Below are positions 41,995 to 42,111 of a stretch of 64,000 nt of DNA, in pieces. This DNA is from Isurus oxyrinchus. Its lineage: Eukaryota. Each line of letters starts with the position of its first letter. The first letter of the stretch is position 1. The position numbers were made by a program, and so were the translations under genes. The notes beneath the pieces are model-generated. The model was not told where the DNA came from, did not search any database, and worked only from the letters and a program-made list of their open reading frames with translations. The stretch spans positions 124,001 through 188,000 of the forward strand of contig JANJGN010000189.1 of NCBI GenBank assembly GCA_026770705.1, in the 5' to 3' direction.

Positions 41995-42111
41995 CTAATA
42001 TCTACAGCAGATACCACAAGTCTCATTTGGTTCTCTCCAATTACAGCAGTGACAGCAGAATCTGCAGGGCCGCTGTCTGCTCATTCTCTTCTGGCGCTGC
42101 AGCAAGGAGCC
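41995..42111 (-). CDS. HAMP: Hepcidin exon 3 (furin site and mature peptide)
   Basis: ctgcttttccag|GSLLQRQKR MSRQRPCRFCCHCCNWREPNETCGICCRY*; eight Cys in hepcidin C-x2-CC-x-CC-xn-CG-x-CC pattern after an R-x-K-R site. Confidence 0.93.
   Translation of the reverse strand, partial: GSLLQRQKRMSRQRPCRFCCHCCNWREPNETCGICCRY

What the first reader, a model, noticed from the sequence alone, without database searches (positions are those of the whole stretch)
41998..42084. Atypical mature hepcidin: basic N-terminus and doubled hairpin loop with an N-glycosylation sequon
Seen: the mature peptide is 29 aa with N-terminus MSRQRP and 8 residues (NWREPNET) between Cys5 and Cys6, including the sequon N-E-T; it has 5 Arg and 2 Glu. 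Established: human hepcidin has DTHFPI (His/Phe needed for ferroportin activity and the ATCUN metal site) and a 4-residue loop (HRSK); teleost HAMP1 begins QSHL. Inference: this peptide may act mainly as an antimicrobial, bind a co-evolved ferroportin differently, or be glycosylated. An extra RxxR (R-M-S-R) could give a shorter form.
Basis: partly seen in the sequence, partly recalled or inferred. Interest (0 to 1): 0.78.

Follow-up and report, generated by a model that had tools for sequence, protein, structure and literature searches.

The report
Diverged long-loop shark hepcidin gene copy
This is a real, spliced and very strongly transcribed shark gene for a hepcidin-type peptide whose long loop turns out to be normal for shark hepcidins, while its N-terminus, the part that normally grips the iron exporter ferroportin, has diverged, so it is probably a sister of the iron hormone and not the hormone itself.

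Summary
On the minus strand, 41998-42084 encodes a 29-residue, 8-cysteine peptide behind an RQKR site. It has an 8-residue C14-C23 loop carrying N-E-T and scores above Pfam's Hepcidin cut-off.

It is exon 3 of a three-exon, 88-codon gene. RNA-like contigs cover the three exon bins at 90,000-204,000 depth, against 0.09-2,600 in the intron bins, and they show the exon 2/3 splice. Siglec-type exons flank the gene.

The key new result is a basking-shark protein, XP_078389754.1 (88 aa, labelled "uncharacterized"). It aligns gap-free with the three exons and has the same Cys spacing and an 8-residue loop, but a canonical M-S-H-L-S-V-C start. So the long loop is typical of the lineage, and only the N-terminus and the sequon are special to this type.

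Related contigs differ from the window mainly in mature residues 3-6. My best reading is a diversifying, HAMP2-like second hepcidin type. Its function is untested.

The scan had already noted the same long-loop form on other pieces of this genome. I found no paper on shark hepcidins.

The parts
46475..46482 (-). TATA-like box (TATAAGAG) about 70 nt upstream of the ATG
   Evidence: Read. Depth in run X1 is 0 in bin 46469-46600 and 161,420 in bin 46308-46468, so the transcript starts just downstream. That it works as a promoter is inferred.
46313..46405 (-). Exon 1 coding part: 31 codons, a signal-peptide-like stretch (MGSSQMKWRLVLFTLTLLLSLQLSHFFSLSR), followed by donor GTAAGC
   Evidence: hydrophobic core, Kyte-Doolittle up to 2.7. 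29 of 31 residues match P0015. The X1 depth bin reads 161,420.
44420..44476 (-). Exon 2: 19 codons of propeptide (VDTALGSSTIEKSVDSPDT), acceptor ...TTTTTGCAG, donor GTAGGT
   Evidence: 16 of 19 residues match P0015. The X1 bin 44376-44536 has depth 90,029 against 21.8 and 438.8 in the neighbouring bins.
41995..42111 (-). Exon 3 coding part (38 codons plus the stop at 41995-41997), acceptor ...TTTTCCAG
   Evidence: Pfam Hepcidin scores 30.3 bits. In X1 a joint from 42112 to 44422, plus loose ends, reads across the exon 3 / exon 2 junction.
42085..42096 (-). R-Q-K-R proprotein-convertase site directly before the mature peptide
   Evidence: P0015 has R-E-K-R in the same columns. That it is cleaved is inferred.
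41998..42084 (-). Predicted mature peptide of 29 residues, Cys at 7, 10, 11, 13, 14, 23, 26 and 27
42067..42078 (-). Codons for mature residues 3-6 (R-Q-R-P), the variable N-terminal patch
   Evidence: 6 of the 9 exon-3 differences listed fall in these 12 nt of 114 (binomial p 9e-5, a post-hoc test).
42019..42042 (-). Eight-residue hairpin loop N-W-R-E-P-N-E-T; the sequon N-E-T is at 42019-42027
   Evidence: None of the 40 shown difference rows and none of the 12 shown indel rows lies here (205 and 36 further rows were not shown).
41149..41154 (-). The only AATAAA on the gene's strand within 1.2 kb after the stop; a candidate poly(A) signal
   Evidence: Not verified, because reads were laid only from 41800 upward.
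27512..28000 (+). Neighbouring Siglec-type V-set exon (open frame); sister frames at 30969-31439(+), 2779-3249(-) and 6330-6818(-)
   Evidence: Pfam V-set and Ig_CD22. Best solved structures are Siglec-7, -8, -5, CD33 and MAG, E 1e-13 to 1e-11. All 13 database relatives are elasmobranch Siglec-like proteins.

Best explanation
The stretch encodes the mature peptide of an intact three-exon hepcidin-family gene of a shark, lying among Siglec-type genes as HAMP lies near MAG in mammals. The precursor has 31 + 19 + 38 codons. It would enter the secretory pathway through the exon-1 signal peptide and be cut after R-Q-K-R. The product would fold into the hepcidin hairpin with four disulfides, by homology 7-27, 10-13, 11-23 and 14-26.

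The 8-residue loop is the normal shark (at least lamniform-type) form, not a defect. What sets this copy apart is the N-terminus. The ferroportin-inserting x-S-H-L-S-x-C start kept by a basking-shark family member is replaced here by M-S-R-Q-R-P-C, and exactly these residues vary between close relatives and co-expressed forms.

I therefore read it as a member of a second, diversifying hepcidin type. It would be functionally analogous to teleost Hamp2 and probably arose by a separate duplication. It would be secreted in large amounts and act outside the classic ferroportin dyad, most likely in host defence.

Shown: the gene, its splicing, abundant transcription of this type, the shared loop length, and the variable N-terminus. 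Inferred: the cleavage site, the disulfide map, weak or absent ferroportin activity, and a defence role. Glycosylation of N20 is possible but unshown; I put it at about 0.2-0.3.
For: GENE AND EXPRESSION
- Pfam Hepcidin scores above its cut-off.
- The splice sites are canonical GT/AG.
- In run X1 the three exon bins have depth 90,029-204,161, against 0.09-2,624 in the intron bins. A joint plus loose ends reads the exon 2 / exon 3 junction.
- The three exon translations align without gaps to the 88-aa P0015 (XP_078389754.1, Cetorhinus maximus; Pfam Hepcidin 44.8 bits).

LOOP
- P0015 has identical Cys positions and an 8-residue loop.
- HMMER places a 4-residue gap in human hepcidin opposite that loop.
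- In organism B, contig record 17 of run X5 spans the exon. All of its 22 gap letters are one 22-nt insertion in the intron.

TWO TYPES
- P0015's best solved-structure match is human hepcidin (1M4F, E 0.028).
- The window's best match is bass hepcidin 1S6W (E 0.36), with no hit to human hepcidin at E<=10.
- In sea bass, Hamp1 but not Hamp2 regulates ferroportin (PMC5665920: title, abstract start and passages).

DIVERSIFICATION
- Against P0015, the prepro part is 52 of 59 identical and the mature part 13 of 29 (Fisher p 4.6e-5). Only 5 of the 21 non-Cys positions match.
- All 9 listed exon-3 differences in the related contigs fall in 7 codons that change the amino acid, and 6 of them lie in residues 3-6.
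- Exon 3 carries 9 differences in 114 nt against at most 6 in 279 nt of flank in X5 record 17 (p 0.016).
- Run X1 shows five variable places with alternative shares of 88, 83, 72, 67 and 25%. That is more than two haplotypes can give, so several copies or individuals are expressed.

ROLE OF THE N-TERMINUS
- The first nine residues reproduce hepcidin's effect on ferroportin (bioRxiv 10.1101/2020.03.16.993006, passage).
- The N- and C-termini are buried while the loop is extracellular and variable (PMC8235187, section 5).
Against: - No function was tested.
- The canonical-type relative comes from another species. I did not show that the window's own animal has it; only earlier scan notes say so.
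- P0015 could be a fast-diverged orthologue instead of a paralogous type.
- Net charge is only +3, and lower still in the organism B and C forms, which is not strongly AMP-like.
- Phe9 and the whole Cys frame are kept, and the loop is tolerated in the ferroportin complex, so ferroportin binding is not excluded.
- 9 of 9 non-synonymous changes is not significant on its own (p 0.16). The clustering test was chosen after seeing the data.
- 205 difference rows were not shown, so loop identity in the relatives is not proven.
- Run X1 is only guessed to be RNA by the tool, and its tissue is unknown.
- The window's exact haplotype is not phased in the RNA. Window letters make up only 12-33% of depth at four of the variable places.
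Confidence: 0.6

Rival explanations
1. It is a working iron hormone. The shark's ferroportin has co-evolved, and this peptide, or the family as a whole, still blocks and internalises ferroportin. In this view the long loop simply stays outside the transporter.
For: - The locus is HAMP-like, with Siglec neighbours.
- Transcript abundance is very high.
- The eight Cys, Phe9 and a C-terminal CC-basic-aromatic end are kept.
- The loop is variable and extracellular in the complex (PMC8235187).
- The ferroportin thiol Cys first appears in cartilaginous fish (PMC8235187).
- The organism B and C forms keep a His and a hydrophobic residue next to Cys7.
Against: - The window copy has no His or hydrophobic residue in positions 3-6. 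Those residues vary between close relatives, which is unlike a constrained hormone.
- A family member with the canonical start exists in a related shark.
- Its nearest solved relative is the bass Hamp2-type peptide, and in sea bass that type does not regulate ferroportin (PMC5665920).
Confidence: 0.2
2. It is a redundant young duplicate under relaxed constraint. It is transcribed because it kept the strong promoter, and it is drifting with no function of its own.
For: - Several forms are co-expressed.
- All listed coding differences change amino acids.
- Earlier scan notes, not tested by me, report many copies in this genome, some with broken frames or lost exons.
- A basking-shark isoform splices exons 1-2 onto a retroelement fragment.
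Against: - The frame, the splice sites, the convertase site and all eight Cys are intact.
- No change is listed in the loop or in any Cys codon across three organism labels, while the N-terminus changes.
- Differences are denser in the exon than in the flanks, the opposite of what simple neutral drift would give.
Confidence: 0.15
3. It is an artefact: an assembly error or a chance cysteine-rich frame.
For: None found. The ORF track misses the gene only because it is split into three short exons.
Against: - The Pfam score is above its cut-off.
- Independent contigs from four runs cover the exon.
- The splice is seen in RNA-like contigs.
- A RefSeq protein of the same length aligns without gaps.
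Confidence: 0.02

Closest known systems
Cetorhinus maximus XP_078389754.1 (P0015), 'uncharacterized protein LOC144671611 isoform X2'
   Same: - 88 residues, and the exon pieces fit without gaps.
- Signal part 29 of 31 identical; propeptide 16 of 19 and 7 of 9 identical.
- A basic convertase site in the same columns.
- Identical Cys positions and an 8-residue loop starting with N and ending with T.
   Different: - The mature part is only 13 of 29 identical.
- Its N-terminus is M-S-H-L-S-V-C (His3, Leu4), against M-S-R-Q-R-P-C here.
- Its loop is N-K-K-G-T-K-K-T, with no sequon.
- Net charge is +5 against +3.
- Its best solved match is human hepcidin, not bass hepcidin.
Human hepcidin-25 (PDB 1M4F, 2KEF, 3H0T, 6WBV)
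   Same: - Eight Cys as C-x2-CC-x-CC...C-x2-CC.
- Six residues before Cys7, and an aromatic residue at position 9.
- A three-exon gene, a precursor cut at a basic site, and a locus near Siglec/MAG genes (Table 1 of PMC7232333; PMC4453067 passages). The direct HAMP-MAG adjacency is recalled, not taken from a call.
   Different: - The human loop is 4 residues (H-R-S-K).
- The human start is D-T-H-F-P-I, with an ATCUN site.
- phmmer finds no match between the window peptide and the human peptide at E<=10.
Sea bass / hybrid striped bass Hamp2-type hepcidin (PDB 1S6W)
   Same: - It is the best solved-structure match. C-R-F-C-C-(N/H)-C-C and C-G-(V/I)-C-C-R-(F/Y) are shared.
- The P-N-x-(S/T) part of the loop is shared, including a sequon at the same place.
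- It lacks the Q-S-H-L start.
- It belongs to a multi-copy, positively selected type (PMC3978493, section 4).
   Different: - The bass loop has 5 residues, against 8 here.
- HAMP2 is reported only from actinopterygians (PMC3978493), so common descent is doubtful and was not tested.
- The antimicrobial activity known for the bass peptide is untested here.
Sea bass Hamp1 (iron-regulatory type)
   Same: The Cys frame and C-R-aromatic-C-C-N-C-C in the core (sequence from the methods of PMC5665920).
   Different: Hamp1 starts Q-S-H-L-S-L-C, which the basking-shark peptide resembles and the window peptide does not. Its loop has 5 residues.

Membership tests
Hepcidin (Pfam PF06446) | Profile match above the curated cut-off | tested here: met
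   30.3 bits against a cut-off of 27, E 5.3e-7, for the exon-3 translation alone.
Hepcidin (Pfam PF06446) | Eight cysteines spaced C-x2-CC-x-CC-loop-C-x2-CC | tested here: met
   Cys at 7, 10, 11, 13, 14, 23, 26 and 27. The frame matches human 7, 10, 11, 13, 14, 19, 22, 23 (Table 1 of PMC7232333) apart from loop length.
Hepcidin (Pfam PF06446) | [quoted passage not shown] | tested here: met
   31 + 19 + 38 codons, R-Q-K-R, and a 29-aa mature part. The size ranges come from PMC3978493, section 4. The splice is seen. The pieces fit an 88-aa RefSeq protein without gaps.
Hepcidin (Pfam PF06446) | Short hairpin loop (4 residues in human, 5 in sea bass) | tested here: not met
   The loop has 8 residues. 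The same holds for the basking-shark member, so this is a lineage trait and does not exclude membership.
Iron-regulatory hepcidin (HAMP / Hamp1 type) | N-terminus x-x-H-(F/L)-x-(I/L/V)-C, which inserts into ferroportin | tested here: not met
   The window has M-S-R-Q-R-P-C. P0015 has M-S-H-L-S-V-C. The role of the first nine residues is from bioRxiv 10.1101/2020.03.16.993006.
Iron-regulatory hepcidin (HAMP / Hamp1 type) | Conserved locus next to Siglec-4 (MAG)/CD22-type genes and USF2 | tested here: inconclusive
   Siglec-type V-set and Ig exons lie on both sides. No USF2 was looked for or seen in the window. The mammalian gene order is partly from PMC4453067 and partly recalled.
Iron-regulatory hepcidin (HAMP / Hamp1 type) | Binds ferroportin and causes its occlusion or internalisation | not testable with these tools
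Teleost Hamp2 (antimicrobial type) | Lacks the Q-S-H-L start; the mature peptide diversifies while the prepro part stays conserved | tested here: met
   Prepro 52 of 59 identical against mature 13 of 29. The changes cluster at the N-terminus. This describes how it behaves, not its descent.
Teleost Hamp2 (antimicrobial type) | Common descent with actinopterygian HAMP2 genes | not tested
PMC3978493 reports HAMP2 only from actinopterygians.
Teleost Hamp2 (antimicrobial type) | Direct antimicrobial activity | not testable with these tools
   This needs MIC assays with folded peptide.

The most novel reading that the evidence does not exclude
Cartilaginous fish may run two hepcidin-ferroportin pairs. 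The canonical M-S-H-L type would act on the ferroportin that carries the thiol Cys. The diverged long-loop type, this gene and its many copies, would have co-evolved with the second ferroportin that some cartilaginous fish possess, which has another residue at that position (PMC8235187). Its loop may be N-glycosylated. That would be the first second ligand-receptor dyad, and the first glycosylated member, in this hormone system.
Probability: 0.07. Interest if true: 0.85.

Novelty: new variant of a known kind. Interest (0 to 1): 0.5.

Why it matters
Hepcidin-ferroportin is treated as an exclusive dyad that arose in early vertebrates, and the ferroportin thiol Cys first appears in cartilaginous fish (PMC8235187). 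Yet in six literature searches I found no description of a shark hepcidin, and RefSeq labels the basking-shark one "uncharacterized".

The data here bear on three points:
- Shark hepcidins carry an 8-residue loop whichever N-terminus they have. This fits the structural view that the loop is dispensable for ferroportin binding.
- A second type with a variable N-terminus is transcribed at very high level. That would be a parallel to teleost Hamp2 outside the ray-finned fishes, where HAMP2 was thought to be confined (PMC3978493).
- Together these give a natural experiment on which residues of hepcidin are tied to ferroportin, and a source of stable disulfide-rich peptides to test.

Tried and rejected
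SEARCHES THAT FOUND NOTHING USEFUL
- The word search with the exon-3 frame padded by open intron frame (58 aa) found no candidate.
- HMMER over 1.84 billion representatives with the 37-aa exon-3 peptide gave 1 protein at E<=0.001. It was P0001, a 723-aa repeat protein without the Cys frame, which I rejected as spurious.
- Self-searches of the window found no second hepcidin copy. The second CC-x-CC codon hit, at 31721, lies in a repeat and is not a gene.
- The search of earlier findings by sequence with P0015 was blank.

IDEAS REJECTED
- Assembly error: rejected.
- 'The loop shows loss of hormone function': rejected.
- 'Strongly cationic, hence antimicrobial': rejected.

THINGS I COULD NOT DO
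- I could not test whether the loop letters are identical in organisms B and C. 205 difference rows and 36 indel rows were not shown.
- I did not see an exon 1 / exon 2 joint among the 15 joints shown; 2,292 were not shown.
- I did not establish the species. Run and organism names are coded. All 13 Siglec relatives are elasmobranch, best 70-72% to Carcharodon. Exons 1-2 are 94% and 84% identical to Cetorhinus.
Those of the nurse-shark plasma proteome (PMC9207270) may hold a shark hepcidin sequence and peptide masses that bear on the loop and on glycosylation.
- Shike 2002, Lauth 2005 and Preza 2011 are not held. That native bass hepcidin is unglycosylated is therefore only recalled.

Full report
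WHAT IS AT THE COORDINATES

The plus-strand reading of 41998-42084 is meaningless. The minus strand reads LFQGSLLQRQKR, then MSRQRPCRFCCHCCNWREPNETCGICCRY, then a stop. A script confirmed the codon map. The 29 residues after R-Q-K-R occupy 42084..41998, and the loop N-W-R-E-P-N-E-T occupies 42042..42019. Cysteines stand at 7, 10, 11, 13, 14, 23, 26 and 27. Net charge is +3, and N-E-T is the only sequon.

Pfam's Hepcidin model scores 30.3 bits for this exon alone, above its cut-off of 27. It places 34 residues on 30 profile positions.

THE GENE

Upstream on the same strand I read two more exons.
- Exon 1 runs from the ATG at 46405 to 46313: 31 codons with a hydrophobic signal-like core and donor GTAAGC.
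- Exon 2 runs 44476..44420: 19 codons, acceptor TTTTTGCAG, donor GTAGGT.
- Exon 3 runs 42111..41998, with acceptor TTTTCCAG.
- A TATAAGAG box sits at 46482-46475.

One search showed the wrong frame and I corrected it.

Their sum, 88 codons, lies within the 81-96 aa given for fish prepro-hepcidins, and the 29-aa mature part within 19-31 aa (PMC3978493, section 4 read whole).

EXPRESSION AND SPLICING

The run search used 311 bases of exon 3 plus 3' flank. It found 20 rows holding part of the stretch, from 9 studies. Three small runs of one sample of 'organism A' held 0.88, 0.63 and 0.63 of the sampled words. Runs of 'organism B' and 'organism C' held about 0.38-0.42.

I laid four runs on 41800-46600.

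In X1, which the tool only guesses to be RNA, the summed contig depth was:
- 204,161 and 196,318 in the two bins over exon 3 and its 3' flank;
- 90,029 in the bin over exon 2;
- 161,420 in the bin over exon 1;
- 0 upstream of 46469;
- 0.09 to 2,624 in the intron bins, the higher values being over repeats.

That profile is what RNA gives, not DNA.

A joint from 42112 to 44422 with one letter between (2 contigs, depth 18,966) is the predicted exon 3 / exon 2 junction with one base changed at 44421. Two further loose ends at 42112, and two at 44419 and 44422, read the junction in the window's own letters. One contig (42099-42444, depth 265) is unspliced. No exon 1 / exon 2 joint was among the 15 joints shown; 2,292 were not shown.

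VARIATION

One search lists nine differences inside exon 3. One search translated them.
- In all four runs: Q to L in the propeptide, H12 to N, R5 to Q, and P6 to L.
- In X1 and organism B: I25 to L.
- In organisms B and C: R3 to Q (two bases) and Q4 to H.
- In organism B only: a second base in codon 6, making it F.

So all nine fall in seven codons that change the residue. Six of the nine lie in the 12 bases for mature residues 3-6 (binomial p 9e-5, a test chosen after seeing the data). Nine of nine non-synonymous is not significant on its own (p 0.16).

In X5 record 17 (41888-42280, 15 differences) at least 9 lie in the 114 coding bases and at most 6 in the 279 others (Fisher p 0.016). All 22 of its gap letters are one intronic 22-nt insertion, so loop length is kept in organism B. 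No shown row touches the loop or a Cys codon. However, 205 difference rows and 36 indel rows were not shown, so identity of the loop is not proven.

In X1 the alternative letters hold 88, 83, 72, 67 and 25% of depth at five places. Two haplotypes of one locus cannot give that pattern, so several copies (or several individuals) are expressed. The window's letters are the minority (12-33%) at four of those places.

RELATIVES

The word search with the exon-3 frame found nothing. The HMMER scan of 1.84 billion representatives gave one spurious repeat protein.

The open frame over exon 1 (57 aa) found 2 of 2 candidates, both from Cetorhinus maximus. P0015 is XP_078389754.1, 88 aa, 'uncharacterized protein LOC144671611 isoform X2'. 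It carries Pfam Hepcidin at 44.8 bits, and the nearest Atlas clusters are hepcidin-like.

The three window exons align to P0015 without a gap. The identities are:

| Part | Identical |
|---|---|
| Signal (exon 1) | 29 of 31 |
| Propeptide (exon 2) | 16 of 19 |
| Propeptide part of exon 3 | 7 of 9 |
| Mature peptide | 13 of 29 |
| Mature peptide, non-Cys positions only | 5 of 21 |

Prepro against mature gives p 4.6e-5.

Its mature part starts M-S-H-L-S-V-C. That has His3 and Leu4, as in sea bass Hamp1 Q-S-H-L-S-L-C (PMC5665920 methods) and like human D-T-H-F-P-I-C (PMC7232333 Table 1). Yet it has the same Cys positions as the window peptide and an 8-residue loop, N-K-K-G-T-K-K-T, with no sequon and net charge +5.

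Against solved structures, P0015 matches human hepcidin best (E 0.028), with a 4-residue gap opposite its loop. The window peptide matches bass hepcidin 1S6W best (E 0.36), with a 4-residue gap and a shared P-N-x-S/T. It does not reach human hepcidin at E<=10.

SURROUNDINGS

Open frames at 2779-3249(-), 6330-6818(-), 27512-28000(+) and 30969-31439(+) are Siglec-type V-set exons. They hit Pfam V-set and Ig_CD22. Their best solved structures are Siglec-7, -8, -5, CD33, MAG and sialoadhesin, at E 1e-13 to 1e-11. Ig exons lie at 62096-62653(-) and 63051-63701(-).

All 13 database relatives of one V-set frame are elasmobranch Siglec-like proteins, best 70-72% to Carcharodon carcharias. Mammalian HAMP lies in a locus with USF2, MAG and the FFAR genes (PMC4453067 passages; direct HAMP-MAG adjacency is recalled). 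The position therefore fits a HAMP-derived locus in a shark.

INTERPRETATION

[quoted passage not shown] The first nine residues reproduce the hormone's effect (bioRxiv 10.1101/2020.03.16.993006, passage). A shark peptide with a canonical start also has the long loop. The doubled loop is therefore a lineage trait and says little about function.

The N-terminus: it is the informative part. It is canonical in P0015, non-canonical here, and variable among the window's closest relatives. A conserved prepro part with a fast-changing mature part, several co-expressed forms and very high transcript level is the pattern described for teleost HAMP2. That type is under positive selection and was reported only from actinopterygians (PMC3978493). 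In sea bass it does not regulate ferroportin (PMC5665920).

I therefore read the gene as a member of a second, diversifying shark hepcidin type, most likely serving defence or another non-ferroportin role. It works like Hamp2; whether it descends from the same duplication was not tested, and I think that unlikely.

The sequon sits nine residues from the C-terminus of a small precursor. It is absent from P0015 and has a counterpart (N-M-S) in sea bass Hamp2. From recall, native bass hepcidin is not glycosylated, and sequons so close to the C-terminus depend on the post-translocational STT3B route. I put occupancy at 0.2-0.3.

R-M-S-R is a minimal convertase motif present only where residue 3 is Arg. 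Its use would leave an N-terminal Gln.

WHAT REMAINS OPEN

- I did not show that the window's own animal has the canonical type. Earlier notes of this scan say it does, and that the long-loop form occurs on many other pieces of this genome. I treat those as untested leads. One weak trace of my own: a 9-letter loose end in X1 at 44461 reads A-V-G in exon 2, as P0015 does, where the window has A-L-G.
- P0015 might be a fast-diverged orthologue and not a separate type.
- The tissue of X1 is unknown.
I could therefore neither fold the peptide nor fetch the neighbouring DNA of the shark Siglec genes to look for more hepcidins.

PRINT

Six searches found no paper describing a cartilaginous-fish hepcidin in the held library. 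The nearest mentions are:
- one sentence that hepcidin was among nurse-shark plasma proteins without a whale-shark orthologue (PMC9207270, passage);
- the remark on ferroportin's thiol Cys and a second ferroportin in cartilaginous fish (PMC8235187, passages);
- PMC6795676 (passage), which speaks only of fish hepcidins in general;
- PMC3832898, which has the word only in its reference list.

A search for N-glycosylated hepcidin found 3 papers, none on that subject by title. Subscription journals and supplements were not searched.

VERDICT

It is a new variant of a known kind and of moderate interest, mainly because shark hepcidins, their long loop and a second diversifying type appear to be undescribed.

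Noticed in passing
window 2419-12986 and 19910-31799: A large inverted duplication. Nine collinear arm pairs are 93-98% complementary (332-3,022 nt each). They carry the Siglec V-set exons and retroelement frames in mirror image around a spacer of about 7 kb.
   Followed up: partly
window 38883-39218 (-), and P0016 residues 51-74: Basking-shark isoform X3 (XP_078389755.1) joins hepcidin exons 1-2 to a retroelement-like piece in place of exon 3. A 92% identical piece (22 of 24 aa) lies on the same strand about 2.8 kb downstream of the window's hepcidin stop. 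It may simply belong to a common repeat family.
   Followed up: partly
window 45300-46130 (intron 1) and 42560-42890, 44900-45260 (introns): Intron 1 holds a long array of roughly 37-nt units (…CTCCAGCCCCTACAACCCTCCCTATCTCTGTAACCTC…). Both introns hold arrays of a GTCAGTACTGAGGGAGTGCTGCAC-like repeat that is extremely abundant in the DNA runs (depth in the millions in run X5).
   Followed up: no
window 44421: Two RNA-like contigs of run X1 (depth 18,966) carry another base at the second-last position of exon 2. It would change the last propeptide residue of that exon from T to M, so it marks a further allele or copy.
   Followed up: no
P0015 residues 74-81: The basking-shark loop N-K-K-G-T-K-K-T looks like two 4-residue units, as if a 12-nt tandem duplication had doubled an ancestral 4-residue loop. 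The window's loop DNA shows no such internal repeat by eye. This was not tested.
   Followed up: no
window 41340-41665: A complex CA-rich repeat (units of about 60 nt built of CACACA / GACACACTGA motifs) lies between the stop codon and the only AATAAA on the gene's strand (41149-41154). If that signal is used, the 3' UTR would be about 850 nt and would contain this repeat.
   Followed up: no
window 947-2131, 52303-56472, 63200-63401: There are nine runs of N (2,207 letters in all), several of them next to CA/TG-rich simple repeats. I left them untouched.
   Followed up: no
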